From assembly GCF_026571515.1 (NCBI RefSeq), contig NW_026865242.1, forward strand, positions 1 through 64,000: a stretch of 64,000 bases of DNA. The letters are read 5' to 3'. The notes under the pieces were generated by a model. It was not told where the DNA came from and did not search any database. It worked only from the letters and a program-made list of their open reading frames with translations. Shown in pieces: positions 756-21,197 of the stretch. Origin of the DNA: Ruditapes philippinarum (taxonomy: Eukaryota). Position 1 is the first letter of the stretch. Every line of letters starts with the position of its first letter. The position numbers were made by a program, and so were the translations under genes.

Positions 756-3700
756 TTAAGTTGGAATGAAAAATGTGTCCGTGTCTGTTGCTTCCGGCTG
801 TAATCCGTTCATTTGCTCCTTTCCGTACATTTTGCATCTTGACACTGTATCAGCCGACTCAGTATAAGAGTATGCGGAACAATAAGCGTCCTCAATGCAC
901 AGTTGTTGACATTTCTTCGAGTCTGCTTTCTTGTCCTCCTCATTTTCGAATCCCCGCGGAACGCCAATAATACCTGTACTGTTGACCACAAGCTGCAAAT
1001 CGATCTTTCCCGGAAACACGTTAGTTTGCCACTCAGCGTTTTCATCATCGGTCTTTATACTTGTCAAACTGTCAGTATTGTTTTCTGCGATTAAATGACA
1101 CGTTTTGTAGTCACGGTTTTTAGCCGAGCAAGTGGTACAAAACGAAACTGCTACACAAGGGATGTCGTCCAGACATATCTCAATACAGTCTGACACAGAC
1201 GACACCGCCTCCTCTTTATAATCTCCAACAATTCTTGTATTCCGTAATTCAATGCCCGCAGCAAGATCTTCGCAAGATTCTATTTCACCTTTCTTTTGAA
1301 GGAATAAGCAATAGTTTTGCTTGTAACTTACGATCTTCTTGAATATTCCATTGTAATCAACACCCAATGACTTCATGTATGTTGCTGTAAATAGATTTTC
1401 TATAGATGAGAGCTGGTATGAAGACGGTACTGGGTTTTCTTTCACCTCGGATGCCCAGGCATTAGCACCTCCTTCTTCCGGCGGCGGAGCCCCAACGGTC
1501 ATTGTCTTAGTCTCCACATTTTCTCGGAAATCTGACATGGCTTGTTCCTGATGGTGTGACAGCTTAAATTTTGCCTTGGTGTACACCCCATACAAGAGAG
1601 CAGACGCACTTGTTTCTACGTTAATTTTTTGTCGCATTTGTTTCTCATAGAATGTTGATGTCATCTTAAACTCGTTTGTATATCTCGCTCCAAACGTTAC
1701 TTCAGTTACAAAATGTGTCCCATAAGTTTGAAAGAATTTAAAGTATAGCTCTTCATCCGACTGAGCTCCATTCAGCTTACGTATCCATTTAATGAATACA
1801 TCGTCAAATTGTGGGGGATTTTCAGTTAACATTTTACTGAAGTAATAATTACATTTGGCTGTGGACAAAACGTAAACGTATTTACCCGAGGACATTTTTG
1901 AAGAAAATCTTTTAAAGCCAAAACTTGCAGAAAATTTAAATCCCCAAGATCTGGCGCTAAATTTTGCATACGTTGATAATGCATTGGAAAATTCGTACTT
2001 GGTTTGTATGGTAGTGGATGAAAATGTCGTAACACAAGACACGTCTGGAATGACGACAAGTCCTCTTGGAACCGAGTATCGACAGTCGGCTGTTTGTTTT
2101 CCGGCGGAATAATCTGCTTTAAATATGGGATACGTAAAACCTGGGTCATGTCCGACAGCGAGCGGAAATCCCTTTAATATGTTGTAGCCCAAAAGTGCGT
2201 AATCTAAATCAGGAAAGGACTGTTTCAACTGTGGACCTTTGCAGTCTTGATAACTTGGCTGCTTTTCTGAAATAAGATCATAAGTGTAAATTTGAAATCA
2301 TTATAGAAATAGAGGTTAACCTTTAACCTCATATAGGCGTCTTTTGACGGCTTTTCGCCCCCCTCCCCTTCTTTTGAGGCCTCAAACAGTGAAATATGTC
2401 CTATTTAGGTCCCAAACTCCGTTTTTCATGTGAGAATTGTTGTTAAAGAAGTGATCACTTTTTCGGCGCCACTTCCCATCATTTAGTCACATCAGGGGGT
2501 TGCCAGAAGGGGGTTGTGCCCCCTTCTGTCTGAGGATTTAAAGGAGGCGGCAGCCAACCCCCCCCCCCCCTCATCGCCAAGAAAATTCTTGACATGTGAC
2601 AGGCTAAAAATGGCATCAGGTCGATCTTACCAACGCTTAAAAGCATTTTACTTTATTTCAATCCATTGAGAAGTTGCAGCACCCCGTTGCCAAGGTAACA
2701 GGAAATTAAAGATTGAGCATGCTATTACAGAGGCTATGGTTCAGTCAACATTAAATTTTGTGCCAAGTTTCATCAGTATTGAAGCATTTTTCATAGTTTC
2801 ATAGCAGTTTGAACTTGTAACAGGAGGCTTTTCAATGAAAACGGCCATTTTTCACAATATGCTCATGCGGTAAAAGGTTAAGTCTTTAGAACTTGAATAG
2901 CCGCGGTCTATATACTTTCTATTGAAATGAATGTTTTGCCTAATTTTTTGATTCCAGCACTTTTAATGGTGTGATTTGAAGGCTTGGAATATGACGCATG
3001 TACCTTTATAAAATCATGGACTGCCTCTTTGACACAAAATTGTCTGCGAATATTTGTTTTTTGTTTCAGTTGCGTTCTCGGGAATACCTTTTCCATTTTT
3101 AGACAAAATGAAACGAAATATCTTATAGTTCTGTGACATGGTTTTTTAAAATGTAATCTTTCTTACAATTTTGTTCAAAAATAGATATGAGCCATGTCAC
3201 GACAAAACCAACATAGTGCGTTTGCGACCAGTATGGATCTAGACCAGCCTGCGCATCCGCGCAGTCTGATCAGGATCCATGCTGTTCGCTATCAGTTTCT
3301 TTATTGTAAGCGAACAGCATGGATCCTGATCAGACTGCGCGGATGCGCAGGCTGGCCTGGATCCATGCTGGTCGCAAACCCATTATGTAGGTTTTGTCGT
3401 GTCGCGGCTCATATATGATCTGATAACTGAATGGCAAAGTGTTTTATTACCTAAATGCATTTCTATTGCATATGCAGAATTGTGATCACCAGTTTGTCGT
3501 TCAGCTGATGGTGCAACCAATGCTTCCAGTGTGCTTTAAAAGTACAAAAATATATATTGTCAACAACACACTGACACAAATCACCCAAGTTTAGTCAAGT
3601 ACTATTGATTTTGTATTTTGTAAAGTAGGAAAATACAACATGTAATAATACAACCTCTTTTTTATTTCATTTTTATTTCAAAGCTGACAAGTAGCATAAA

Positions 3701-4449
3701 ATTGATAATAATTTATTTTTAGATCTTTATTTTGTTTTTCATTTATTATGTTATTTATTTTTATCATTTCTTCTTATTATTTTTGAACGAAAATATGAAT
3801 TTCATAATCATAAATTTCCTAAATTGATTTCATTTTGTTTAACACCATCTTTATTGTATATATAATAAAAGACACCAGAAGAAAACAAAACAGTAATATT
3901 CACCTGTCTTGCTTTATCTGTGTAACAGAGTAGACAACAATGGCAGTCACAATAAGTAAGCTGATGACCATAAGCTTAACACACCCTCCTGAAACCTGTA
4001 AAGCAAAAAAAAAAACCCTTATGTACGAATATAACAGTTTTCTGATTATTCCAACACCAAACTCATCACAGCGGTTACGTCACACTTTGCTTCTTTAACT
4101 GTACTGATCAGGGGAAGTAACCGCTGCGGGGAGTTTGATTATCACGTATGCTTAAAGTGGATTGGTCTACAATGGTCACATGATCAACAAGTATTTCAAA
4201 TATTTTTCAAAACAATATGCCATTTGGATATTCTTACAAAGTATTTCTTGTTAAAAAAATGTTGATCGAGTTCGAAGTGATTTAGTATGAAAATATTCGT
4301 ATGATGTATAATAATATTTTGTTCTAGAATAATTTTTTATCTGTTATATAAAGATGTGTAATATCACATCATGTATCTCACATCTACCAACGACAACCAT
4401 ATCTAATTTTCTCATAATTATAGTTTTTGTCAAGTATTATACTAAATAC

Positions 4450-4510
<61 letters not shown>

Positions 4511-7267
4511 TCTTTATTTAAAGAAGGTTACACATTAAGAACATACAATAACAATCATATATATCTTATTTCCAAAGTGGCCTTCTGAAAAAGAAAACAA
4601 CAACAACAACAGGACATGCATAGGTAGAAAAATGAATGTATAATATGTAATTTTTAGAATAATACAACTCATATACTTTCGACAGGCACTCAACAATTTT
4701 TGTTTAAACATATATGTATATTGCATCATTTGTTCGTTCGTTCATTCGTTCGTTCATATATTTATTCATTCATTCATTCATTCACTCACTCATTCATTCA
4801 TATGAACATCAAGATATGCTTTGTATTTTTCTTTAAAACATTTAAGGTTATTAACATTACGAATATTTAAAGGTATATTGTTCCAAATGTTCATGCCATA
4901 ATAAGTAAATGTGTCTTTAATATAATTTGTTTTAGGTCTTGTCCATAATACAATATCTTTCCGTGACCTAGATCTTAAGTTATATATTTTGTTGTCGGAT
5001 AAAGTCATCAGTTCTGTCATATACGTCGGTGCCATGTTATTTAAAGTTTTAAAAACAAGCACCGCCGTGTGGTATTTACATCTGTCAAGGAACGGTAACC
5101 AATTAAGAGTTTCGAATAGATTTGTTGACGGAGATCTTTGAGGTTGCTGTAAAATGTTTTAGCAATTCGTTTTTGCGACGGACGCGCCCTCAGGCGCGTT
5201 CAGAGCTAATTCATCTACACATGGGATTTCGTCTGCTACAATCGCGCAGTGTCCTCAACCGAGTAACAGCCCATGAAATAGTACATGAATTTGATCCTTT
5301 AAAACTTACATTCTTTGTCGGGATATCTTAAAATCTTCCATATTTAGCCTTTTCAATTTTCAAATTAAGTTATCCAAGTTAAAATATGAACGTATTTGAT
5401 TGATAAAAACGTTGTAGTCCCGTAGTATTATTGCGCAATATGCAAATTACTGCCGAAACGATTTACAGCTGTCGAAAAAGTAGGACAGCAAATTATACTA
5501 TAATAAAGGTGTAAGCTCTGAGTTCCAAAAAATTATTAGTAGGACATAAATATTTCTACATTATACAAAACATAATTATTAACAAATCAAAGTTTTTCGT
5601 GACTCTAGAATAACTCGCGCATTAATAAAAGAAGAACTATTTTCGTGACTCATACAGCGGGTTTAGCTGAATATTCAGCAGTTATTAATAAATTAGATAT
5701 AGTATAATGGTTAGTATAAATATCTATTTTTGAAAATGCTTGTAACAAGAGAGTTTTTTCAACACTTTACTACCATGTAGTCTTTCATGGTAATCTTTAT
5801 TGAAGGAAGTTATAATATCAGTTCTACTTCCGATTCTTGTGGTTTGTTTACATATTTTTCTAGGTCACGATATAACATTCGCTATTCTAAAAATAGATTA
5901 TGCTTCACCTGCAGGCGATAAGGGTGTACACATTATACATGTAATAAACCAGCGGATACTTACTTTGCTTACATGCAATACTTACAATTGTAAGAAAATG
6001 GAATTTAGTGTGAAATTGAAAAGAACAGCTTAAGTGGCATTTAAATTAAAATAAAAACGATGTGCTCTGGCCTCTACATCTTTACCTTGTAAATAAAAAA
6101 AATCTAAAAAATACACTTTTAATTGCTGATGATTTCAACCAAAAATATTTTTAATTAATGAGACATATCCAAGAGAAATAAAAATACAAATGACTTCTAT
6201 TTTATTGTCTGTATGCCCACTATGATATAACACGAAGCAATTCTAAATAACATTCTCACATGTATAATGTATTATGCTTGAAGTTAATTTGCATGGTTTA
6301 TTTTAGAAATATTTCGTTGACAGTTTTTTCTATTTACATATCATTCCTTGGACACTGATTTACAAGTTTGACCAGAGTTTTTAGGCATAAATTTCATTCT
6401 GTATAAGTAGAAAATCTGAATTACATCAGATTTGGACACATAATATATATTGCTCTACAAATCTCGAACTTGTATGGAACAAATTTTCTCTGTTATATCT
6501 TTTGTGTTGTTTTTTTTTCTAAAAGAAAACCTTAATGTCTCTCCGGTTGCATGTCCGTCGCATTCAGTGCTGCAGCACTTTGATTGTAACTTACAAACAT
6601 TATTTATGTAGTTTGTGTTTCCTTTACCCCATATAATACAACAATAGTCCATAATGGGCAATATATATGCATTGTAAAACAATAATTTCATATCAAAGTG
6701 CAAAAAATACGATATTTTTTTCAATAAGGCAATTTTTCCGTTAAGTTTTTTTACAAACATTGTCAATTTGCAAGTGCCATTTTAAGTTGTTATCTATGCA
6801 AATACCCAAGACTTTTTGATCAGTTACATTTTCAAGAGCTATTTCATTTATCTTAAGAATTAATTTTCTCATAATATTTACTTTTTGTCTTGTTCCTATT
6901 ACCATACATTTTGATTTATCTGGATTTAAGGCCATATTATTTATTTTGCACCATTTGTCAATGTTATTTAAATGATCTTGAAGTTTTATACTATCAACAT
7001 GCATAATTATTTATGGCATTACATACGTTTTATTATGTATCATTTCACTTTAAAACCTTTACTCGACTAAAACTGTCTCGGAAAAAAAATAAAACCAAAG
7101 AACGTTTATTTATTACTTACAAAGTTTGGACATTTATGTTTCGACATTCTCTGGAAGATAGATGGATGTCTGTTCAAACGTTCGTACTGACGTTGTAACG
7201 CTCCATTTTGATCTTGTAAAGTTGTATTCTGTACAAAAATTTCGCTTGGTCTAGCATCTGATGCCAT
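756..7267 (-). CDS. MACPF-domain (perforin-like) protein with N-terminal tail + hydrophobic anchor and two C-terminal PAN/apple-like domains, paralog 1 (597 aa)
   Basis: Coding exons complement(join 7121..7267, 3904..3995, 3490..3533, 756..2266), all GT-AG, intron phases 0/2/1, 1794 nt open. N-terminus MASDARPSEI...CPNF|VSGGCVKLMVISLLIVTAIVVYSVTQIKQDS|TLEALVAPSAERQTE|KQPSYQDCKGPQLKQSFP. MACPF signature variant YGTHFVTEVTFGA. Two Cys-patterned modules (CIEIC..CVAVSF..C; CQQLC..CSAYSY..C) typical of PAN/apple domains. Confidence 0.9.
2320..2877. mobile_element. piggyBac-like non-autonomous element (MITE) in MACPF paralog 1 intron 3
   Basis: TTAA on both sides. Imperfect TIR CCTTTAACCTCAT / ATGCGGTAAAAGG (11 of 13). 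No ORF. Confidence 0.6.
3185..3414. mobile_element. Foldback MITE family A, copy 1
   Basis: ~105-bp inverted arms (atatgagcc...ggatccatgctgttcgct / agcgaacagcatggatcc...ggctcatat). Four copies in the window. Confidence 0.9.
4451..7004 (-). mobile_element. 5'-truncated non-LTR retrotransposon (CR1/L2-group-like) 3' fragment, interrupted by a Helentron-like insert
   Basis: RT C-terminal remnants (KWCKINNMALNPDKSKCM, LGICIDNNLKW, FYNAYILPIMDYCCIIWG, LNWLPF..RCKYHTAVLVFK, YNLRS) with frameshifts, then a 3' UTR, AATAAA and a (TTA)n tail at 4451-4510. Confidence 0.85.
5173..6583 (+). mobile_element. Non-autonomous Helentron/Helitron2-like element
   Basis: Subterminal inverted repeats TGCGACGGAC (5174-5183) / GTCCGTCGCA (6553-6562), 5' hairpin ACGCGCC..GGCGCGT, 3' palindrome AGTGCTGCAGCACT. 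Inserted in a T run with no TSD. Removing it rejoins the LINE codons LQ|KRIAK. Confidence 0.75.
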
Positions 7268-7835
7268 TTTTCTTTCCTATGGTTGCTTATTTTACTCCAA
7301 AATAACACTCATCGTTAATATAAAGCCTTAAACTGTTCTATTTTAGAGGACACGGTTATGGAAAGTCGCCCTACGTGATAACTTTCGACAAATCAGAGGC
7401 ATACAAGGAAATATTTTTAAACTAAAAAATGTTTAGAGACAATTCATTGTAAATAACACCTTTTTCTTTTGCAAAGTTATTATACACCTAATTTGAAACC
7501 TTTTGTTGAATATCTTGTAAATCAGGGAAGTTTTTTTTAAAGGTTTTGTATCAGCGACAGTTTACAAAAACATAAATCCATGGGGAACATTGGTTACTTG
7601 CTCGTTAAATGATGAATTAATTTCCTATTGCATTGATGTGTACGTGACTGAATTATTATTTTCGTCTATTGAATGAAAGAATAAAGAAAATAAATAAATA
7701 AAATAATTTTAATTTCATGTTACGATCTTCATTAAATGGTGGATAATAAGATAAAGATGAAGTACATGTAGTAAATCAATGAAGGCCGACAAGATTTGAC
7801 CAGAAAGAATGATCATTACTATTGACCATGAACAA

Positions 7836-8073
7836 ATGAGCCGCGTCACTACAAAACCAACATAATGGGTTTGCGACCAGCATGGACCCAGACCAGCCTG
7901 CGCATCCGCGCAGCCTGATCAGGATCCATGCTGTTCGCTGTCATTTTCTCCACTTGTAATATAGTTGGTAAGCGAACAGCATGGATCCTGATCAGACTGC
8001 ACGGATGCGCAGGCTGGTCTGGATCCATGCTGGTCGCAAACCCACTATGTTGGTTTTGTAGTGACGCGGCTCT
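7836..8073. mobile_element. Foldback MITE family A, copy 2
   Basis: Same long inverted arms as 3185..3414. Confidence 0.9.
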
Positions 8074-8143
8074 AATACATGTACACCAAAAATGTTGTCT
8101 AAATATTTACGTGTACAATAACATTCTAGTTACTTGAGTTTAA

Positions 8144-8380
8144 GGTAGAACGCGACACTGTGAACTTTCCATTGGCGTTCTGAAAATTGGCATGTATAAA
8201 GTTGATCATATTTCAGATTCCGTCGATTTTATTCCAATAGTTTTAGCCATTTTTTGTACAAATGACGTCAAAGTTGACCACTGAAGCCCGATTTGGAACA
8301 TGAAATCTGAAATATGGTCAACTTTTTACATACCAATTTTCAAGACTCAAACTAGAAAGTTTGCAGTGTCGCGTTCTACC
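8144..8380. mobile_element. TTAA-flanked MITE (Kolobok-like termini)
   Basis: TTAA-GGTAGAACGCGACACTG ... CAGTGTCGCGTTCTACC-TTAA, a 17-bp perfect TIR with further internal symmetry. Confidence 0.8.
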
Positions 8381-8677
8381 TTAAGTATTGCTGTTTGAGG
8401 TCGTTGTACAGTAGACAGTCAATCAAAAGGTGCACTTCATTTTCAATAACATACACATTACATAATAGACAAAATTAACAATAACTTAATTCTTTGTAAT
8501 TGTTTAAGTACCCTCCTGATTTTATTTTCAAGCTATGGCCACTGCATCTAAAATTTGCTAAGGCGCGCTAACATACATAAAGGCATACTCTTTGACAAAT
8601 AGCATTCATCAGAACTATATGTTTTATACATACTGTAACTTATAGCATTTGGCATAAATATAAATATCAGACATTAA

Positions 8678-9024
8678 AGCAGCACGCATCCAGATTCATG
8701 GTAACTTTCCTTAAAAAAATCAAAAATGTATTTAGAAAGTAAATTATTGTAAAGTAAACAAAGAAAGTAATTCACGCATTGCAAAGAGCACTTCCAATCT
8801 ATGAAAGTTACCTGAAATAATTCAAAATACGCAAAAATAGCCCTAACTGCGCTAGTGAAGCAGTAGAAATATGGTGATTAATTCTGCACAATCAGCCACT
8901 CATTGCATATAACATGTAAATAATTTCTTGAATTGTAATAATTTTATCTTTCTTTGAATCATCGTATATTTTTCTCAAAGTTCATTATCTTGCAATTATT
9001 TGGCTCATCTGGATGCGTGCAGCT
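8678..9024. mobile_element. TTAA-flanked MITE (Kolobok-like termini), second family
   Basis: TTAA-AGCAGCACGCATCCAGAT ... ATCTGGATGCGTGCAGCT-TTAA. Related right ends near 30715-30736 and 35199-35220. Confidence 0.75.
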
Positions 9025-10352
9025 TTAACGCTTGTCTACAGCAGTATGAGACTCGGGTCTTAAATGTTTGCATGAATGACCCCGTTGGCCAAGACCTATG
9101 TGAAATAGCATACGTTCAACATAAGTTGCCCGTGTGATTCGCCCTTATTCTTTCAGTTTCTCAGCATGACCTAACATTGAAGGTCCTAATGATGGCTTAC
9201 AAACTTGGACTTACACATTTGTAATAAGGTTTTTAATCTCCCATATTTATTGTCTTGTTTGTATTTCATTACTCCTAATCATTATTAAAAAAGACTTCAT
9301 AAGGCTTTCCAAACTCCTTATTAAAACTTACACAATTTTTAAAGAAAATTTTGCGTACCATAACACTTTCGAAAATATTGTCATTTTTTTAAAAGAAATT
9401 TTCGACCATGCGACCACATACATGCATCGAGGACATGTTTTAATATAAAGTGACCGTGCGACCACATACACGCATCACATGATTCCCCTTCTCTTACGAG
9501 AAAGGGACAAAGAGTTGCCCGTCTTTTTATTAAAGGACAGACTTTAAAAATATGCCATTTCCATTATGTTATAAGGAGGCTAATTTTCACAGATATGTCT
9601 TAAATTGGTTTATATACAAGACTATTTATGCAAACCAAGCGAGTTTTAGTTTTTCGTTCTTTTAAGTTCGCTATGAAATTTTCAAAAGATCATATATAAT
9701 TTCTTGTAAAGTTTGAGTTTACAGGTTTTTTTTTACTTTTCATTCTGTCTATATAATAGAATTCTTTTGCTTTTGCAAAACATGAACGTTTCCAAAACGT
9801 TTTATATGCATTGAATATATATTTCACACTTTGTTTGCAAATATTAACCTGGGGGAATTTTGCTAAAATACGCATTTAGTTTCTATATTCGCCTTATCCT
9901 AGTAGTAATAGAAAAGGTATAGATAATGTGATGGCCTGTAAGAAAAAAAGATGCCGACAAATCTGACACTGGTAGGACTGTATGTATTTGCAAGCCTAAT
10001 CTAAACTTGCTAAATTTGTTAAATGCACTTTTCAAACTTCCATTGTTTTAGATCTATCAATCTTGGAATATTAGATTGAAATTTCTAATGTAAATAAGCC
10101 ATATTTACAGAGCCGGTTCAGTCTGCATGGATGTACAGCCTAGCTTATTCATTTCGGTTCCAGCATACATGTGTAACGTACGCATACATGATAAAAACGT
10201 ACAAATTGTGCTAACATTATAAGTAACGTAGACTTTATCATATGAAAACTATAAACAACGGAAAATCGTGTTCGTGACCATGTTCAAAGCCACGTTTAAC
10301 ATATTTTGTATATTGTGCTTAGATGAAAAAAATAGGTAGAAATGTTTAGTCA

Positions 10353-10547
10353 CGAAAAGTTATGTACAGGGAACGTTTTCTTTATTTACATCATTTATAT
10401 AAAACTCTGTGCATGTTTACTTTTTCTCTTTTTATTTCTTGCGAAAAAATGTAGCAATGTTCTGTTGCATTATTAACCCCCAACATTCAGAGTTTTTGTA
10501 GTGGTTACAGCATTGTTTTCACTTTTGAACCAATTTTAAGTTATAAT
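10353..10547. repeat. Second copy of the ~195-bp block at 8..203
   Basis: Direct sequence match. Lies ~145 bp downstream of the paralog 2 stop codon. Confidence 0.9.
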
Positions 10548-10689
10548 AAATTTTAATATCAAAATACTATCATTTGTGCAAGCAGACCTGGCACTAAAAT
10601 GGTGGTAAAAGCTAATCACTTTCGCTTCCAAGAGGCTAATGGCTAGGATCGAAACAGTTCATCAATGTATTCAGATATAGTTATTATAT

Positions 10690-13600
10690 CTATAAAGTTA
10701 CGTCAATGTTGCTGGGTAGAAAGAAAGTATCCATGCCAACCATTTTCTCAAGGGCTGTTACAAGCTTTTGATCGTAAAGTTTACATAGAGTGGTATTGCC
10801 TGAACTGTAACTAAACGTGTAAACTGAACAGTAAGCTTCAGTAATGCAGAGCTGTTGACAGCGGTCAAGATCTGCGCGCTTATCATCTTCATCGTCAATA
10901 GAGATTTCTGGACCAATAACAGAAACATCGCTTAATTTCAGTTGGGTGTCCATTTTCACTGTAAAGATATTACTCTGCCAAAGAGGGTCCGGTTTTTCTG
11001 TTTTGACAGCTGAAATTGCCGAGTTATTTAGTCCCCTCAGTAAAAAACACTTCTTGTAACCGGGATCTTTACTCAAACATGAAATGCAGTAAGTTGTTGC
11101 TTTGCAGAGGACATCTTTCAAACATTTGTCGATGCATCCAGATATCGAGGTGACGGCAAGTTCTTTGTAGTGTCTTAATAGTTTTGTGTTCTGTAAGATG
11201 ATTCCAGCGCCTAGATTTGCACAAGATTCCACTTTACCAGCTTCTTGCAGAAAGGAACAATATTGGTACTTTAAGCCTATTATATGACCACGCATCTTTT
11301 GATAGTTGATTGTCATGTTTTCCATAAATGTATCTGTAAAAAGGTCTTCGATCGATGAAAGTTTATACTCCGTCGGTATTGGGTTTGACTGAACCTCTAA
11401 GGCCCACGATAGCGCCGTTCCATTTTCTGCTGGGGCGATACCAACAGGAATTACTTTTGTTTCAACATTCTCTTCGAATTCGGGGGCATATCTCTGAAGC
11501 GTAGTTGACAAACTAGCATCAAGAGATAAACGTTTTGCCCCTACGTAATCTGATAAAATATTCACGTTGACATTCCGCCTCTTTAATTGATTATAATATT
11601 TTGACGACATTTTGTGTTCAAATGTATATCTAGCTCCAAATGTAACTTCTTTTACGAAATGTGTGCCGTAAGTGTCAAAAAGCTTGAAGTAAAGTTGAAT
11701 GTCAAGATCCGCTTCATCGAGTTTGTTTAAGAGATTAAGAAAAGCCTCGTCGAATTGTGGAGCTTCCTCCTGTACCAACTTACTAAAATAATATTTGCAT
11801 TTTACTGTGGAAAACACGTAAACAGTTGCACCGGATGATAGTTTTGACGACGTTTGCTTATACCCAATGCTTGCAGAGAAGCTTTCACCCCATGGGTTTT
11901 CTGAAGTGTCTTCGGTGTTCTTCGGTGCTTTCGCGTCATTGTCTCCTTGTTTTCTGTCTTCACCTTCTATGTTAGTGTGTGCTTCAAGAAGTTTTGAATA
12001 TTCATATTGTGTTTGAACTGTCTGAGAGGTTACTGAAAGGAAACATGAAACATCAGGGTTGACAACTAGTCCATCGGGTACAAAGAAACGGCAATCAGCG
12101 GATACACCATTTGAGGAAAAATCGGCAGCAAATATAGGGTAGGTGAACCCTGGGTCGTGACCATCTGCCAGCGGAAATCCCTTCAGTATATGATACCCGT
12201 ACAACGCGTAGTCGATGTTTGGAAAGGAACGCTTGAATTTAACATTGCCGCAGTGTTGAAAGGCGTGCTTCGAACCTAGATATAAGCATAAAATATTCAT
12301 AAAATATAATCTCGAAATATCTGCTGTCTTTCTATTTTATATCGGAGACAATTAATTGTGTATCTAAACTAAATATGCTATTTATTACTGCAGTATCAGA
12401 ATTAGTTCCTTGCTGATATTCNNNNNNNNNNNNNNNNNNNNNNNNNNNNNNNNNNNNNNNNNNNNNNNNNNNNNNNNNNNNNNNNNNNNNNNNNNNNNNN
12501 NNNNNNNNNNNNNNNNNNNNNNNNNNNNNNNNNNNNNNNNNNNNNNNNNNNNNNNNNNNNNNNNNNNNNNNNNNNNNNNNNNNNNNNNNNNNNNNNNNNN
12601 NNNNNNNNNNNNNNNNNNNNNNNNNNNNNNNNNNNNNNNNTCTTCTTCTGTTCAATACATCATTACATAAATACATGAAATACGTATAACTTATTTATAA
12701 TTTTTTGGGTAGAAAAAAAGTATCAGTTTTACAAATCATTAAGTGCAATGAGTGCACCACTCACCTATATTTAAGTCTATGTCGTCATACGTATTGGCTA
12801 CCGGCTTCATCTCCGACGCTAGGGAAACCAGTGAATCTATTGCACTAGAGTACAGGAAGATAATAATATTTAATTCATAAAAGTTCTTTTTAAGAAATGT
12901 TATTAAAACCATGTTTTGGAATTTTAGGTACAAATTTAATTTATCTTATTGAAGCATTACTTATTGTAATGTTATGTAATGTAATAATAATAAAATTAAT
13001 GCCGGAATTGGGAAAATAAATAGCCGGGATCAAGCCCTTGATTTCCGCTGTTGGTTCAAATCCCGCCAGGGACTTCGGAGGAAGCAAAGCTATCTAGCTA
13101 GCTTCCGGAACGTTGGTGGTTCTACTCAGATGGCCGCTCGTGCCTGAAATGGCGCATTGAGGGGCACCTGAGGTCTTTCTCCACCAGTAAAGCTGGAAAG
13201 TCAACGTATGGCCTTTGAAAAGTGTCGGTGTGGCTTAAAACCCAACGAAATAAACAAAACATTAAAGATATACTATGCTCAAATTTGATATTATAAAATT
13301 TTGATAATTGCTACACAGTTTCTTTGTAAATATAAAATAAACATGTTTTGACTTCAGGGTTTTTTTAAAAGAAAAGACCAACTTTACTTGACCTGTTACC
13401 GTGAACGCAGCTTCACGTGCATTGTTTACTCATTCTTGTAATCAAAGTAGACATATTCAGTAAGAATTTCACAAATTTCAATAGATCTATGCAGTTAAAA
13501 TACTTTAATTAAGGATGAGCATAGTATATCTTTAGAAAAACAAACGTTAATCTTAGCTTTAAGAAAAAGAAGAAAGAAAAAACACCTTCCGCTTACTTGT

Positions 13601-14915
13601 TTTCTTTGATGTGCGTAAGTGTATATGCTACAACTGCTCCACTGACTATTAAAAACACTGCCATATACTTCAGCGCTGTTTTGATTCTCTATAAAACATT
13701 TAAACATTCATGATTTGCATCAATGAACATTTTCAAATATATTTTAACAGTTATTTTCACCTGAAGCCGAAATAAATAAACAATTTTAAGAATAATTTCT
13801 AAACTTCATTTTTTTTGTCTGTAGTGTTCAATATTTTTTGTTTGTTCAATGGCCTTCTTTCTATGGACGAGCTTTTTGTTAATCTTATGCAATTGATTAA
13901 TGATAAGAATGATTTTACAATAAAGCTGAGGTTTTTTTTCGCTGAAGATTTTGCAAACTTATAGTTTGCAAATATGTTATATGCAGTGGATGAACTATAT
14001 ACATCGTATTGTACCAATTAAAGATATATATAGGATCTCACATGAGATGTAATATAATTTTATAAGGTTATTACACATTGCTGAGTTCAATATTGAATTC
14101 TAATGGACTATTACTCAGTTGTGAAACCTATATCGGACGATGCACCAGCTCACTCAACCTCTTTATTTCACACCTCCAATCGTTTTACATTTCGACAGAA
14201 CTTTTTTTACTTTGGATACAATATGAAATTCATATGGATTTGGACAAACGACGCTAGATTGATAAAACTGGTTTCAATTATGATTGATATTGGAACATCA
14301 CGTGGTGCAAACGCTAAATGTTAACTGGTAACATTTCAAACGATGCGAAATAAAAAGAAATACGTCATGGAAAACAGACGTCATGTGATAAAACAAGTTA
14401 TCACATATCCGTGCCGTTTTTGCGTCTCCGTAAATATGGTGTTGCACGGCCGTGCACATATTTTGACGTGACGTCATTTTTGCGGTATATAAACATACAG
14501 TAGCGTTAAGACGTGCAAAATGTTAGCGTTACACTATAGGCGCATCAATGAAAAATGGTTCTTTTTGAACTCGCTGAATAAAATAATTTTATTCAACTCG
14601 TTCAATAAATTCAGAATTAAACTTACACTCATTCAATATCCTCTATATAATGTTTGATGTTAGTTTTCGATTCAGCCTGGTAAATTAATAATTACTTAAA
14701 ATCTAAACTTTTAAGAACCCCATTTAATTTTCCTGGCGTCACAAATCTTATTAAATGAAAAGACTTACCAAGGATTTGTACCTGGGTTCAGGTGTAGTCT
14801 TATATTCCGACTGGTGTAAACCACGGCGTTCTTGTAATCGAGGTAATATCTCACTATGATCTCTAAGCGGAATACCATCAGTTTCTATCTCCCTCGGGCT
14901 GAGTATGGTTGCCAT
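10690..14915 (-). CDS. MACPF-domain protein with N-terminal tail + hydrophobic anchor and two PAN/apple-like domains, paralog 2 (634 aa)
   Basis: Coding exons complement(join 14769..14915, 13597..13688, 12765..12844, 10690..12275). The first two exon sizes (147, 92 nt) and the intron phases equal paralog 1. N-terminus MATILSPREI...RYKSL|RIKTALKYMAVFLIVSGAVVAYTLTHIKENN|AIDSLV...LNIG|SKHAFQHCGNVKFKRSFP. Motif YGTHFVKEVTFGA. The N gap lies in the last intron. Confidence 0.88.
12422..12640. other. Assembly gap (N run)
   Basis: 219 N bases. Confidence 1.
13020..13258 (+). mobile_element. tRNA-derived SINE, degenerate 5' end
   Basis: B-box GGTTCAAATCC. Body (agctagctt..gtggttctactcag..ggggcacct..ctccaccag..aagctgga) shared with the copies at 31950 and 54833. 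A-rich tail. Confidence 0.75.
14028..14648. repeat. Interspersed palindromic repeat family ending in ...CACTCATTCAATATCCTCTATA
   Basis: The right half matches the reverse complement of ~30291-30630. Related pieces at ~19520-19650, ~20020-20190 and ~37200-37275. Class not determined. Confidence 0.6.
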
Positions 14916-15845
14916 TATATATGCGATGAATATTAAAATAGTAAATTAGTTTATTTTAACCATGCAGAAATAAACAAAATGTGTAGGTATGATATGTCGA
15001 TCATAGTATGATAATGGAAATTCAATACAGAAAACTTTGCTATTGAAAACATTGGGTGTTTGGGTGTTTGTTCCTTTTGTCCGAGCCACACAAGGAAGTT
15101 TAGTAGTCATGTCGCTATCGCCGTGGTTTCGAGGTGGTTAAAGCTATTTTTAGTGTCATATTTTGTTAAAAACATAGATATATTGATAGGGCATTTGATT
15201 TCTAAAGTTTAAAAACTCTTATGTGTACAATCGAATTTTACACTGCTACGATGAACCTTAAATGAAGATAGTATCAAGCCTGGATCTTCCTGATTGTAGG
15301 AAATCATCAGAATTGCGTTGGAATTTCTGACTGTTCATTGGAATTTCTGACTGTTCATCGGAATTTCTGACAGTTCAAACATGCGTTTCTCTCTGCGGAA
15401 AATTCCAAAAAGCATTATATTTATCCTTACTCATTAGAATTCCAGACTTTTTGCTGTATTTCACAAAAAATAAAAATGAAAAGCTATCAGTATTAAAGAA
15501 ATATCCTTTATTACTGTTTTTTCCCCGCCAAACTCTAATCTCAAAAACTAACGTTGCGGGTGTGATTTGTTTTGGGTAGAACATAATATGTGCATTTTAT
15601 CAGTTGAAAATTTATGTGTATGGGTATAATCTAAGCACCTTACTATGATAAAACTAAACGTCGAGTGGCATTTTATGTAAAATTCAAATATTTCCACTCG
15701 AAGAAAAAACACAAACTAATTAATTGACTTTTTTCTGCGTATTTCGAACTTAACGAAAGTAAATCGCATTGATATGCCAAATACATTTTGAGTGACACTT
15801 TCACTCAAGTCAAATATATTGACTGACACTTTCACTGAAGTCAAA

Positions 15846-15998
15846 ACACTTAAAGTTGGAAATCATTACAGATCCAGAAAGTGATGCAACCTTGTTTAGA
15901 AGAGCTTGGGAAGTAGAGCGGGTGCGGCTTTTAAAGGAGGGGTGGGTGCGTCCAGATGCGTCCTTTAATGGAGAGTTTGTGCGTTCTAAAGTGGAGTA
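15846..15998 (+). repeat. 153-bp direct repeat (left copy of putative LINE target-site duplication)
   Basis: Matches 23005..23157 with one mismatch (ttgtttag vs ttgcttag). Abuts the LINE tail. Confidence 0.92.
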
Positions 15999-16377
15999 TA
16001 TTATTATTATTATTACACTTTATTTCCCATTTTCATAGATTTTAACATAATAGAAGAAAAAAAACATATATATATATATAAATGTACAATCACAATCATT
16101 ACAAGTTATACAATAATTCAACATAGAAAATATAGGTCATGGTGTAAACATAGGTTAAGCACATAAATTTATATGCATCATAATATAATTTATACATATT
16201 TACATTTGTAACAAAAGATGCTGCATGTGATATATATATATATTTATATATATAATTTATTGTCTAGAATTCCATTTAAAATTAGTGCTTTAACGAAACG
16301 AAAACAAAAACACTAAAAAATGGATTAACATCTAGGTACGCTTATTGTTTGATATGACACAATTTGTGAAATATATT

Positions 16378-18177
16378 TCAGTTAGTTTCTCTGACAGTAA
16401 ACTTGTTGCCTACAACAAGTTTTATATAAGCAAACGACTGGAATAAAAAGGAGTGGTACTCGTTTGGGTTTATTGCACATGTGTTTAAAAGAAGAGATCC
16501 CATCATAGCGTCAAGTTTTAAAGGATTTGAAAGATTATGTATGTCTTGTATAATATTGATATTTACAATGGAATTGAGTTGATCAAAAAAGTGTGATCTT
16601 TCATTGTTGTTAGATGGACATTCTAAACATATATGTGTCAATATATCACTTGTTTGAACGTTACATTTTAAACACATCTGGATTTTTAAGTATGATACAC
16701 TTGCCCATAATTTTGCAATGTACATACACAAAGTCAACTCCTGAGCATTACGTGGTATTTCGTAAATTATAGCAGGTTTAAGGTCCAGATGTAATCTTCT
16801 GAAACGAATAAAGTCTTCATCTTCAAAGATATTTTTTCTCCATTCAAAAACTGTAAACGATTTAACAGCTTTTTTAACAATTATTTTCCACATCCATTTA
16901 GATGCAAAACGACCACTTTTGGCATAGTTGTATAAGTAATCTGTTAAATTATATTTTCTTAGAATTCTAAATATATCTGGTATGAATCCTTTCTGAATAG
17001 TGAAATTTCCATTTATAAACAGCTGTAATCTAAGATCGAAAATTTGTCTTGCCAGTAGATATGTTGGTGTTGTGCATAGTTTTTCGAGAAAAAGTAATTT
17101 TCTTTTGTCAATATTTGACTCCATTGATGACCAACCAAGCATACTTAGTGCGATGTCCGTTCTTGTTCTTTGACTGAAATTTTGTATACGTTTGGCACAG
17201 AATCTAACAAACTTTTCTACGATATTTGAATCATTCAATGTCATGCTATTCCATAGTTCACAGCCGTAAAGAGTCGTAGGGAAAACTATTTTTTCAGTCA
17301 TATTTGCTAGAATCATTGGATTTATTTCAGAGTCTTCATTTCTTAAGTCCAATATTGAAAATAAGGAACCTCGGCCTTTTGAGCACCTAGTTTCGATTGA
17401 ATTAGTACATTTTAGTGATGGCACAACATCAATACCGACGTGGCGAGCACTATATACACGTTGTAGATTCGTTGATGCTATCCGAATCATCGGTGGTATA
17501 TGTGGGTTTCTTTTAAAGCTGCATATCAAAAATTTGCTTTTTTCTCGATTAAAAAGGAACCTCCATTTACATGAGTATGAATATGCAATATTAAGAGATG
17601 ACTGTAGAGAATTTGCATCCGGGCAAATAAGAGTAATATCGTCTGCCATTGTAGGCGCGGAGCAGTTTAATTTTCCCACAAAACAACCTATTTTATTGTT
17701 TTCTAGTTCATTCAGAAGATCATTTATGTAGATTAAGTAGTAAAAACTTGACAACACTCCTCCCTGTCTTGTTCCTTGGTGCAATAAAAACGCATCTGTG
17801 ACAGTTCCATTCACATATATCATACTCGTCATTCCGCTGTAGCATTTCATTATTATTCGTAGAGTTTTTGATGGTATGCCGATTTGTTTGAGTTTGTAAA
17901 ATAGTCCATTGTGCCAGACTGTGTCAAAGGCTGACGAGGTGTCTAAAAGACCAACATATGGTTCTGAACCATTTTCGCAATAATATGACACGGTTTCTCT
18001 CAGGACGAATGAAGTTGTTAATGAACCAAGATACTTTTGATAGCCATTTTGTAATTTATTCGGAAATTGCATTTGTGTCTCACATAACCATTTTTGTATT
18101 CTGTTCATTTTAACTTTTTCAAACAGTTTATAAATAACTGGTAAAAGTGACACTGGTCTATAACTCGTAACTTTCTT
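16378..18177 (-). pseudogene. LINE ORF 3' half (reverse transcriptase + CCHC finger)
   Basis: Continues in frame as KKVTSYRPVSLL. The joined ORF is 3546 nt, 1181 aa, without stops. Confidence 0.9.
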
Positions 18178-18185
18178 AGAGCACT

Positions 18186-21100: not shown

Positions 21101-21197
21101 ATTCGTCACAAAAGTCATTTGTGACGAATGTGATCACATTCGTCACAAATTCATAAAAACTTGTGACGAATGTGATTTGTGACACATGTGGCCTAAC
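18186..21197. mobile_element. Non-autonomous TIR DNA transposon (~3.0 kb) inserted in the LINE ORF
   Basis: TIR GT(A/T)AGGCCACATGTGTCACAAATCACATTCGTCACAA. Subterminal arrays of ATCACATTCGTCACAA at both ends. Flanking duplication AGAGCACT (18178-18185, 21198-21205). No transposase ORF. Confidence 0.9.

What the first reader, a model, noticed from the sequence alone, without database searches (positions are those of the whole stretch)
756..14915. Tandem pair of MACPF-2xPAN genes predicted to be type II membrane-anchored (N-terminal cytoplasmic tail + signal anchor)
Seen: three small upstream exons per gene, not recovered as parts of these genes by the ORF track, splice in frame with matching sizes (147 and 92 nt) and phases in both paralogs. 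They add a ~57-aa hydrophilic tail (shared MA, P.EI, L.D, L.R..ER, H.S) and one 17-aa hydrophobic stretch preceded by basic residues. Known: perforin-1 and complement C6-C9 are secreted, perforin-2/MPEG1 is anchored by a C-terminal (type I) helix, and PAN/apple domains bind proteins or glycans. Inference: these proteins are tethered at the N-terminus with MACPF and the PAN domains facing the lumen or exterior. This is the reverse of the MPEG1 topology and could be an independently evolved tethered pore-forming or recognition system. I cannot confirm novelty without a search.
Basis: partly seen in the sequence, partly recalled or inferred. Interest (0 to 1): 0.8.

Follow-up and report, generated by a model that had tools for sequence, protein, structure and literature searches.

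The report
N-terminally anchored perforin-like gene pair
Two neighbouring clam genes encode perforin-like proteins that seem to be pinned to the cell's own membrane by their front end, a layout shared by unstudied relatives in molluscs and cnidarians.

Summary
Both minus-strand genes have four exons with canonical GT/AG sites: 147 + 92 + 83/80 nt, then one large exon. One 2175-nt contig spans all four exons. The N gap lies in intron 3 and is bridged in frame. Gene A (756-7267) rests on homology only. My model is 610 aa, not 597, and its expression was not tested.

Exons 1-2 give a 56-aa hydrophilic tail and an 18-aa uncharged core, with net positive charge on the N side. The large exon folds confidently as MACPF plus two apple domains.

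The layout is a family trait, not a local oddity. Seventy-nine of 126 retrieved relatives with a complete-looking N-terminus have an internal helix. A short tail motif recurs from hydrozoans and jellyfish to clams.

The best reading is a type II signal-anchored MACPF-PAN protein. Whether it stays tethered or is later shed is unknown. [quoted passage not shown] Six literature searches found no description of this animal family. The one look-up of earlier scan notes (near this window only) showed nothing related.

The parts
7121..7267 (-). Gene A exon 1: start codon and 49 aa of the hydrophilic tail
   Evidence: It is the first ATG after a stop. The donor is GTAAGT. It is 57% identical to the N-terminus of Mercenaria P0002 by tblastn. 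No RNA test was made.
7214..7240 (-). Gene A tail motif (family motif of the form hydrophobic-F/Y-x-E/Q-N-x-x-L-K/R/Q)
   Evidence: Regex match in e1. The same motif is in 33 of 79 relatives with an internal helix. Shuffled tails gave a mean of 0.03 matches among 35.
3904..3995 (-). Gene A exon 2 (92 nt): basic residues plus the transmembrane segment; uncharged core at 3921-3974
   Evidence: AG acceptor and GT donor. The core is 18 aa with mean Kyte-Doolittle 2.52 and flanks of +3 / -1. It is 48% identical to P0002 residues 59-83.
3451..3533 (-). Gene A exon 3 (83 nt): juxtamembrane and linker segment
   Evidence: tblastn with P0002 residues 84-111, 46% identity, E 0.002. Canonical splice sites, and the frame closes into exon 4. 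It rests on homology only.
756..2266 (-). Gene A exon 4: MACPF fold (about 1272-2225), PAN1 (1017-1253), PAN2 (768-992), stop at 756-758
   Evidence: Pfam MACPF 1.7e-31, PAN_1 7.6e-08, PAN_4 4.4e-07. AF2 model pLDDT 90.1, pTM 0.82. Foldseek top hits are TgPLP1 and MPEG1, and FXI/prekallikrein apple domains also match.
14769..14915 (-). Gene B exon 1: start codon and 49 aa of tail
   Evidence: An in-frame stop lies upstream at 14946-14948 with no ATG between. The joint 13688/14769 is seen in X1 and X2. The X2 contig reaches 14939.
13597..13688 (-). Gene B exon 2 (92 nt): transmembrane segment; uncharged core at 13614-13667
   Evidence: Both of its joints are seen in spliced contigs. The core is 18 aa with mean KD 1.88 and flanks of +4 / -1.
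12765..12844 (-). Gene B exon 3 (80 nt): juxtamembrane and linker segment; it holds the Met at which the RefSeq model P0025 starts
   Evidence: Joints 12844/13597 (X1, X2, X3) and 12275/12765 (X2, X3). P0025 residues 1-16 match at 100%.
12422..12640 (.). Assembly gap, inside intron 3 of gene B
   Evidence: Position read. Contigs of X2 and X3 join exon 3 to exon 4 across it. P0025 and P0014 align without a missing piece. Its letters were not sought.
10690..12275 (-). Gene B exon 4: MACPF fold (about 11221-12234), PAN1 (10966-11202), PAN2 (10720-10941), stop at 10690-10692
   Evidence: Pfam MACPF 2.2e-21, PAN_1 7.8e-08. It is 99.6% identical to Ruditapes philippinarum LOC132728328 (P0025). It is covered by contigs of X1-X3. 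Coordinates come from the alignment to gene A.
11899..11961 (-). Gene B: 21-aa charged insertion (4 K/R, 7 D/E) at the predicted tip of the first membrane-inserting hairpin (TMH1)
   Evidence: Alignment A1. An insertion at the same place, with a different sequence, is in P0014, P0019 and P0023. It is absent from gene A and from the 7 other rows shown.

Best explanation
Both genes encode single-pass type II (N-in, C-out) membrane proteins. They belong to a MACPF-PAN family shared by Cnidaria and Mollusca that I found described in no paper.

Predicted layout:
- About 56 cytosolic residues, carrying a short conserved helix motif. It is clear in gene A and degenerate in gene B.
- An uncleaved signal-anchor helix.
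- A flexible stalk of roughly 30-50 residues.
- On the luminal or extracellular side, a perforin-like MACPF domain followed by two PAN/apple domains.

Inferred mechanism, step by step:
1. The anchor inserts the protein co-translationally, with the disulfide-rich ectodomain in the ER lumen. This is predicted from hydrophobicity, charge bias and family conservation.
2. The conserved tail directs sorting, or brings copies together, on the cytosolic side. This is inferred from conservation only.
3. The tether keeps the pore-forming module on the producer's membrane during trafficking. This is an analogy with TgPLP1 and MPEG1.
4. The apple domains bind a glycan or protein target. The MACPF domain then oligomerises, either while still tethered or after proteolytic release. 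This step is speculative.

Gene A keeps plain alternating TMH segments. Gene B's clade carries a charged insertion at the TMH1 tip and may be a poorer or non-lytic partner.
For: Gene structure: canonical splice sites and closed frames in both genes. For gene B there are three spliced joints in contigs of three studies, and one 2175-nt contig covers all four exons.

Anchor: 56 hydrophilic residues precede an 18-aa uncharged core. Flank charges are +3/-1 (gene A) and +4/-1 (gene B).

Family level:
- Among the first 120 hits, 35 have an internal helix of 19-29 aa starting at residue 23-143. The N-minus-C flank charge is above 0 in 33 and equals 0 in 2.
- Over all 287 proteins retrieved, the counts are: 79 internal helix, 13 hydrophobic at the extreme N-terminus, 2 short N with a hydrophobic stretch, 32 long N with none, 115 with a short N-terminus and 46 N-truncated.

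Tail motif: found in 14 of the 35 tails it was defined on, against a mean of 0.03 in shuffles and 0 in 20,247 other residues of the same proteins. It was then found in 16 of 26 new internal-helix proteins that were not used to define it.

Full-length Mercenaria orthologue P0002 (AF2): helix 19-36 over the motif, helix 57-93 over the anchor, and pLDDT below 50 at residues 38-55 and 93-116.

Ectodomain: Pfam MACPF and PAN. AF2 pLDDT 90.1. Foldseek finds TgPLP1 at E 1e-16 with TM 0.68 by target, then MPEG1, perforin and C8, plus FXI/prekallikrein apple domains. The profile against PDB sequences gives TgPLP1 2.7e-31 and factor XI 2e-6.

Precedent for the logic: TgPLP1's signal anchor (PMC5618198, passage), and MPEG1's helix and tail used for trafficking with proposed shedding (PMC7593815, passages).
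Against: - No experiment and no dedicated topology or signal-peptide predictor was available. Hydrophobicity and charge rules are heuristics.
- Gene A has no RNA evidence here. No protein at 90% identity or more to it was among the hits (best 72%, candidates limited to about 270-857 aa), whereas gene B has a 99.6% RefSeq match. Gene A may be unannotated, rarely expressed, or absent from other individuals.
- The raw-read RNA run X24 gave only depth 0-4 on gene B's exons and no joints. X3 did not cover exon 1.
- The RefSeq model of gene B (P0025) starts in exon 3 and lacks the tail and helix.
- Of the 287 proteins, 161 have short or truncated N-termini and say nothing. Thirty-two have long N-termini without a helix, 13 have a hydrophobic stretch at the very N-terminus and 2 more have a short N-terminus with one. 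Either some members are secreted or many models are wrong.
- Gene B's tail does not match the motif.
- The family's MACPF signature reads G-A where the recalled consensus has G-G.
- Pore formation is untested. The beta-amphipathicity scan was weak for gene B.
Confidence: 0.7

Rival explanations
1. Transient anchor. The proteins are made as type II pro-forms, but the tail and helix are a propeptide. It is cut off in a post-ER compartment, so the working molecule is a soluble MACPF-PAN protein in granules, haemolymph or mucus. This differs from the main reading only in the final state.
For: The closest solved relative, TgPLP1, does this according to the review PMC5618198 (passage). Shedding is also proposed for MPEG1 (PMC7593815, passages). 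AF2 gives a low-confidence, probably flexible stretch between the helix and MACPF in P0002 (residues 93-116), which would be accessible to proteases.
Against: I saw no conserved dibasic or furin-like site in the stalk of genes A and B (sequence read; no formal scan was made). The conserved cytosolic motif fits a sorting signal on a propeptide equally well, so it does not discriminate.
Confidence: 0.35
2. Plain secreted protein. The hydrophobic stretch is a signal peptide removed co-translationally by signal peptidase, and the 56 residues before it are irrelevant or mis-modelled.
For: Fifteen of 287 relatives have their hydrophobic stretch at the extreme N-terminus or on a short N-terminus. More distant MACPF-only relatives have classical-looking signal peptides.
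Against: The ATG of gene B is fixed by an upstream in-frame stop, and the transcript contig covers it. A 56-residue n-region and an 18-29 aa core are typical of signal anchors rather than signal peptides (recalled rule). The tail motif is conserved between cnidarians and molluscs.
Confidence: 0.08
3. Non-lytic receptor. The proteins are cell-surface recognition, adhesion or developmental molecules that use the MACPF fold without making pores, as is discussed for astrotactins.
For: They are membrane anchored and carry two protein- or glycan-binding apple domains. Gene B's clade has a charged 21-37 aa insertion at the TMH1 tip. The signature has G-A instead of G-G. Astrotactin-2 appears among the structural matches (ranks 28 and 30).
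Against: Gene A and most of the family keep alternating hydrophobic/polar TMH segments. The best sequence and fold matches are proven pore formers: TgPLP1, MPEG1, perforin and C8/C9. The family is expanded in tandem arrays, which is more typical of immune effectors (recalled generalisation). A mussel contig named after perivitellin-2 67 kDa rose 42-fold after Vibrio (PMC7772429, one table row), but whether it belongs to this clade is unknown.
Confidence: 0.25
4. Gene A is not a working gene. It is an unexpressed recent duplicate or a presence/absence variant, and its upstream exons are relics.
For: No near-identical protein appears. No RNA test was made. Pseudogene fragments of the family exist elsewhere in the genome, one of them 81% identical to gene A with two stops.
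Against: The reading frame is open over all four exons. All family-invariant residues are present, because gene A is the reference row of A1. Splice sites are canonical. Its terminal branch is short (0.16).
Confidence: 0.15

Closest known systems
Toxoplasma gondii perforin-like protein 1 (TgPLP1; PDB 5OUP/5OWN)
   Same: It is the best match by sequence (E 4.5e-15 with the single sequence, 2.7e-31 with the profile) and by fold (Foldseek E 1e-16). [quoted passage not shown]
   Different: It is apicomplexan and microneme-secreted. Per that review its anchor is a cleaved propeptide. Its C-terminal membrane-binding domain is a different module (recalled, not checked here), not PAN/apple. I did not look for the animal tail motif in it.
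MPEG1 / perforin-2
   Same: It is a membrane-tethered animal MACPF whose helix and cytosolic tail serve trafficking, and whose ectodomain faces the lumen or exterior (PMC7593815, passages). It is the second group of fold matches.
   Different: It is type I: signal peptide, MACPF, MABP domain, then a C-terminal helix. The sequence relation is weaker (1.4e-09 by profile). It has no PAN domains.
Astrotactin-1/2
   Same: The MACPF fold is anchored from the N-terminal side (two N-terminal helices; PMC13090629 introduction, passage).
   Different: It has two helices, EGF repeats and an FNIII domain, and it is vertebrate and neuronal. The match is weak (E 0.002-0.006 by profile; Foldseek ranks 28 and 30).
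Perivitellin-2 67-kDa subunit of apple snails (the source of the automatic names 'perivitellin-2 67 kDa subunit-like' and 'PV21-like')
   Same: It is a molluscan MACPF. Databases name some family members after it (P0016, P0116, P0088).
   Different: PV2 is a secreted egg toxin whose MACPF chain is linked to a lectin (abstract of PMC12031178 in the listing; further details recalled). I saw no PDB sequence of it, so I could not compare directly.
Apple domains of coagulation factor XI / plasma prekallikrein
   Same: The two C-terminal domains match them by profile (2e-6) and by fold (ranks 46-50). Four cysteines per domain are conserved in the family (seven invariant, one nearly so).
   Different: There are two domains rather than four, with no protease domain, in a different protein context.

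Membership tests
MACPF/CDC superfamily (Pfam PF01823) | Profile match above the curated threshold | tested here: met
   110.5 bits (gene A) and 77.4 bits (gene B) against a cut-off of 21.5.
MACPF/CDC superfamily (Pfam PF01823) | Bent central beta-sheet flanked by two helical clusters (TMH1, TMH2) | tested here: met
   AF2 model with pLDDT 90.1. Foldseek probability is 1.00 to TgPLP1, MPEG1, perforin, C8 and C9.
MACPF/CDC superfamily (Pfam PF01823) | Signature Y/W-G-T/S-H-F/Y-x6-G-G (recalled consensus) | tested here: inconclusive
   Y-G-T-H-F-x6-G-A in both genes. G, T, H, F and the first G are invariant in A1, and A replaces the second G in 90% or more of rows.
MACPF/CDC superfamily (Pfam PF01823) | Oligomeric pore formation | not testable with these tools
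   Only alternating TMH patterns are visible, and the amphipathicity scan was crude.
PAN/apple domain (PF00024 clan) | Profile match and conserved cysteine core | tested here: met
   PAN_1, PAN_4 and PAN_2 hits for gene A. Gene B has PAN_1 and PAN_2 on the second domain only. Cysteines C360, C364, C370, C389, C452 and C477 are invariant and C456 and C462 nearly so. Apple-domain fold matches appear. Gene B's first PAN is assigned only by alignment to gene A.
Type II (signal-anchor) membrane protein | One internal hydrophobic helix, no cleavable N-terminal signal peptide, net positive charge on the N side | tested here: met
   The core starts after residue 56, is 18 aa long, and has flank charges of +3/-1 and +4/-1. 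The same pattern holds in 35 of 35 relatives examined for charge, with a difference of 0 or more. This is a prediction only.
Type II (signal-anchor) membrane protein | Demonstrated N-in/C-out orientation and retention in the membrane | not testable with these tools
   It needs tagging, protease protection or glycosylation mapping.
MPEG1 / perforin-2 | Signal peptide, MACPF, MABP domain, C-terminal type I helix | tested here: not met
   There is no hydrophobic stretch after the PAN domains, and the protein ends 3-27 residues after PAN2. There is no MABP hit. The anchor is N-terminal.
Apicomplexan perforin-like proteins | MACPF plus the apicomplexan C-terminal beta-rich domain | tested here: not met
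   The MACPF is the closest match, but the C-terminal part is two apple domains.
Astrotactins | Two N-terminal helices, EGF repeats, MACPF, FNIII | tested here: not met
   There is one helix and no EGF or FNIII hit.

The most novel reading that the evidence does not exclude
Animals have a second, independent tethered-perforin system besides MPEG1. It would be a pre-bilaterian family of type II anchored MACPF proteins whose conserved cytosolic helix motif (roughly L-F-E-E-N-x-R-L-K in cnidarians) couples sorting or clustering inside the cell to a luminal or surface pore-former. That pore-former would be aimed by swappable recognition domains: PAN in most members, and a VOMI domain in some clam paralogues. 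The family was retained and expanded in molluscs and cnidarians. It was not seen among named hits from other phyla.
Probability: 0.35. Interest if true: 0.7.

Novelty: new variant of a known kind. Interest (0 to 1): 0.55.

Why it matters
MACPF proteins are central immune and developmental effectors. How a cell protects itself from its own pore-former, and how it aims that pore-former, are open questions. A conserved family that ties the MACPF domain to the membrane by its N-terminus would offer a natural comparison to MPEG1 (C-terminal tether) and to TgPLP1 (a transient N-terminal anchor).

The family has a cytosolic motif shared by jellyfish and clams and exchangeable recognition domains. It is also likely to be missed by surveys that require a signal peptide. 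One anthozoan MACPF survey did require this (PMC11090067, methods passage). In practice it also shows that the public gene model of gene B is truncated at its 5' end.

Tried and rejected
With e3 = 83 nt the frame gives 610 aa.
- Direct splicing of e2 to e4 is out of frame in both genes (worked out), so a third small exon is required. It was found by tblastn for gene A and by RNA joints for gene B.
- Raw-read RNA run X24: too shallow on this gene (about 4 in 100 reads sampled; depth 0-4) to show joints.
- The very high depths at 12986-13569 and 14300-14737 are intronic repeats, not exons.
- PV2 as the closest characterised relative: I could not test this. No PDB sequence of it appeared, and a term search in PMC12031178 found nothing.
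- Oyster MACPF paper (PMC13090629): it describes MPEG1-like and ApeC-bearing proteins only, not this layout.
- Literature: six searches gave no paper describing a tail-helix-MACPF-PAN protein. Only the top 15-25 of each listing were seen. Subscription journals and supplements are not covered, including supplementary table S1 of PMC11090067, which lists the anthozoan sequences.
- Taxon range: ten unnamed proteins were looked up and only one got an organism name (Sanderia malayensis). Named hits are all molluscs or cnidarians, but most hits are unnamed, so absence from other phyla is not shown.
- The beta-amphipathicity scan was too crude to decide pore competence.
- ESM Atlas only returned the family's own cluster (MACPF plus PAN_1, mostly Mollusca).

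Full report
**What is there.** Two large open frames lie on the minus strand, at 756-2228 and 10690-12300. Both carry Pfam MACPF plus PAN matches. Reading the minus strand upstream of each and checking by script gives two four-exon genes.
- Gene A: 7267-7121 (147 nt), 3995-3904 (92), 3533-3451 (83), 2266-756 (1511).
- Gene B: 14915-14769 (147), 13688-13597 (92), 12844-12765 (80), 12275-10690 (1586).

All introns are GT..AG and the phases are identical in both genes. The products are 610 and 634 aa. Exon 2 cannot join exon 4 in frame, so the third small exon is needed. For gene A it was located by tblastn with the Mercenaria proteins P0002 and P0003.

Every search used exon 4 alone, and the small exons were handled one at a time.

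**RNA evidence.** The run search gave no holder on record as RNA. It did give 20 runs holding about half of gene B's words, and one raw-read RNA run. I laid X1, X2 and X3 (Logan contigs, three studies) and X24 (raw RNA reads) on 10650-15000.
- Joint 13688/14769: X1 and X2.
- Joint 12844/13597: X1, X2 and X3.
- Joint 12275/12765 (printed 12273/12763, cut +2): X2 and X3.
- All have CT..AC ends, which is GT..AG on the minus strand.
- One X2 contig of 2175 nt covers 10650-12273, 13597-13688 and 14769-14939. The 82 record letters between the first two pieces fit exon 3.
- Unique intron bins have zero depth, so these contig sets behave as transcriptomes although their label is a guess.
- The only length changes in that contig are outside the coding part.
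- X24 was too shallow (depth 0-4, no joints). X3 did not cover exon 1.

**The gap.** The N run at 12422-12640 lies in intron 3 of gene B. The exon 3-exon 4 joint bridges it. The RefSeq protein P0025 (Ruditapes philippinarum LOC132728328) matches exon 3 from its Met and then exon 4 at 99.6-100% without a break. No coding sequence is missing, and I did not look for the gap's letters. P0025 also identifies the organism as Ruditapes philippinarum or a very close relative. It shows that the public model lacks exons 1-2.

**The N-terminal part.** In each gene, 56 hydrophilic residues precede an 18-residue uncharged core (mean Kyte-Doolittle 2.52 and 1.88). The 15-residue flanks are net +3/-1 (gene A) and +4/-1 (gene B). 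By the positive-inside rule (recalled) this puts the N-terminus in the cytosol. An n-region of 56 residues is far longer than in cleavable signal peptides (recalled).

**The family.** A search with gene A's exon 4 gave 193 proteins at E of 0.001 or less, of which 120 were listed.
- Of these 120, 93 contained the landmark motif I used.
- Of the 93, 46 had 45 or more residues before it.
- Of the 46, 35 had an internal hydrophobic helix of 19-29 aa, 4 had one at the extreme N-terminus and 7 had none.
- The N-minus-C charge difference was positive in 33 of the 35 and zero in 2.

A profile search of 1.84 billion representatives gave 3953 proteins at E of 0.001 or less and 544 at 1e-30 or less. A further search with a Hydractinia member was also made.

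Over all 287 proteins held, the classes were as follows:

| Class | All 287 | 178 reaching PAN2 |
|---|---|---|
| Internal helix | 79 | 61 |
| Hydrophobic at extreme N-terminus | 13 | 7 |
| Short N-terminus with hydrophobic stretch | 2 | 0 |
| Long N-terminus, no helix | 32 | 13 |
| Short N-terminus | 115 | 65 |
| N-truncated | 46 | 32 |

Many short models start at a Met inside the last exon. This is what an ORF caller does with a gene of this structure.

Named members are bivalves (Mercenaria, Ruditapes, Dreissena, Mytilus, Potamilus, Sinanodonta, Pinctada, Mya), the gastropod Batillaria, and cnidarians (Stylophora, Montipora, Dendronephthya, Hydractinia, Clytia, Rhopilema, Sanderia). Most hits are unnamed.

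**A conserved tail motif.** The tails share a short motif of the form hydrophobic-F/Y-x-E/Q-N-x-x-L-K/R.
- It occurs in 14 of the 35 tails on which I defined it, and in gene A's exon 1. Shuffled tails gave a mean of 0.03, and there were no matches in 20,247 other residues.
- Because the motif was drawn from those same tails, the better test is the later set. Of 26 new internal-helix proteins, 16 carry it.
- Gene B and its Mercenaria orthologue have a degenerate version.
- In the AF2 model of the full-length Mercenaria orthologue P0002 (pLDDT 82.9), the motif lies in a helix (residues 19-36) and the anchor is a long helix (57-93). The segments 38-55 and 93-116 have pLDDT below 50.

Conservation of a cytosolic-side motif across such a distance argues that the tail is functional. 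It does not look like a discarded leader.

**The ectodomain.** Gene A's exon 4 folds with pLDDT 90.1 and pTM 0.82. Foldseek against the PDB puts the TgPLP1 MACPF domain first (E 1e-16, TM 0.68 by target), then MPEG1, Mpf2Ba1, perforin and C8. Apple domains of prekallikrein and factor XI match the C-terminal part. Sequence searches agree.

The family signature reads Y-G-T-H-F-x6-G-A. Gene A and most of the family have plain alternating TMH1 and TMH2 segments. Gene B, P0014 and two unnamed relatives carry a hydrophilic insertion at the predicted TMH1 tip. In gene B it is 21 aa, with 4 K/R and 7 D/E.

**Evolution and copy number.** In a quick ML tree, gene A groups with an unnamed protein and the Mercenaria pair LOC123559988/987 (SH-aLRT 95). 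Gene B groups with Mercenaria LOC123559990 (99), and the two groups are sisters (100). The duplication therefore predates the split of the two clam genera. The neighbouring LOC numbers on one Mercenaria contig suggest a conserved tandem cluster, but I did not test that.

The window's genome is 1.41 Gb in 15,874 contigs. It has 33 matches to gene A's exon 4, about eleven of them full-length and open. Five lie on one contig, and there are several fragments with stops.

**Comparison with what is known.** MPEG1 is a type I protein whose helix and tail guide trafficking and whose ectodomain is thought to be shed (PMC7593815, passages). Astrotactins have two N-terminal helices (PMC13090629, passage). 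[quoted passage not shown] That anchor is sufficient for microneme targeting, is later cleaved, and may prevent self-lysis (PMC5618198, passage). An N-terminal anchor on a MACPF protein therefore has a precedent, in the closest solved relative.

I found no paper on the animal tail-helix-MACPF-PAN family in six searches. [quoted passage not shown] A mussel gill contig named after perivitellin-2 67 kDa rose 42-fold after a Vibrio bath (PMC7772429, one table row). Whether it belongs to this clade is unknown.

**Verdict.** The topological inference is the best-supported reading (about 0.7), and it extends to a family shared by cnidarians and molluscs. Supplements were closed.

Noticed in passing
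window 11899-11961 (gene B); same column in P0014, P0019, P0023: The gene B clade carries a hydrophilic insertion of variable sequence at the predicted tip of the first membrane-inserting hairpin. It is absent from gene A and from the other family rows shown. It may mark a non-lytic or accessory paralogue.
   Followed up: partly
window 12765-12810 and P0025: The RefSeq model of gene B (Ruditapes philippinarum LOC132728328, 543 aa) starts at a Met inside exon 3. It therefore lacks the tail and the membrane helix that the transcript contigs show.
   Followed up: yes
window 12986-13569 and 14300-14737 (introns 2 and 1 of gene B): These stretches have summed contig depths in the thousands, hundreds of raw RNA reads with loose ends, and many odd internal joints. 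They look like abundant, transcribed interspersed repeats. They were not classified.
   Followed up: no
window 16378-18204 and 21093-22943 (minus strand): Two long ORFs (608 and 616 aa) look like the reverse-transcriptase and endonuclease parts of a LINE (my reading; no family scan was run). The scan's note s1-804696 describes a LINE insertion at 15846-23157.
   Followed up: no
window 6455-7004 and 4790-5062 (intron 1 of gene A, minus strand): There are retroelement-like ORF fragments, and an (ATT)n microsatellite at about 4455-4520, inside the 3.1-kb first intron. Gene B's first intron is 1.08 kb.
   Followed up: no
window 44199-44540 and 46484-47976 (plus strand): These ORFs resemble a DNA-transposon transposase, with a helix-turn-helix part followed by a DDE-like part. 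This is my reading only.
   Followed up: no
P0098, P0109, P0128 (Mercenaria, Ruditapes): Some relatives pair the same MACPF with a VOMI domain (PF03762) instead of PAN. P0098 and P0128 also have an internal helix. This suggests that recognition domains were swapped on one anchored chassis.
   Followed up: partly
G000:C12098 (five open copies at about 16.6, 58, 79, 104 and 135 kb) and G000:C8764:51-856: A further tandem array of the family lies elsewhere in the genome. There is also a fragment 77-81% identical to gene A with stop codons.
   Followed up: no
P0008 (Mercenaria LOC123538976 isoform X2): An annotated isoform has a 37-aa N-terminus without any hydrophobic stretch. It is either an alternative first exon giving a protein with no entry to the secretory pathway, or a modelling artefact.
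   Followed up: no
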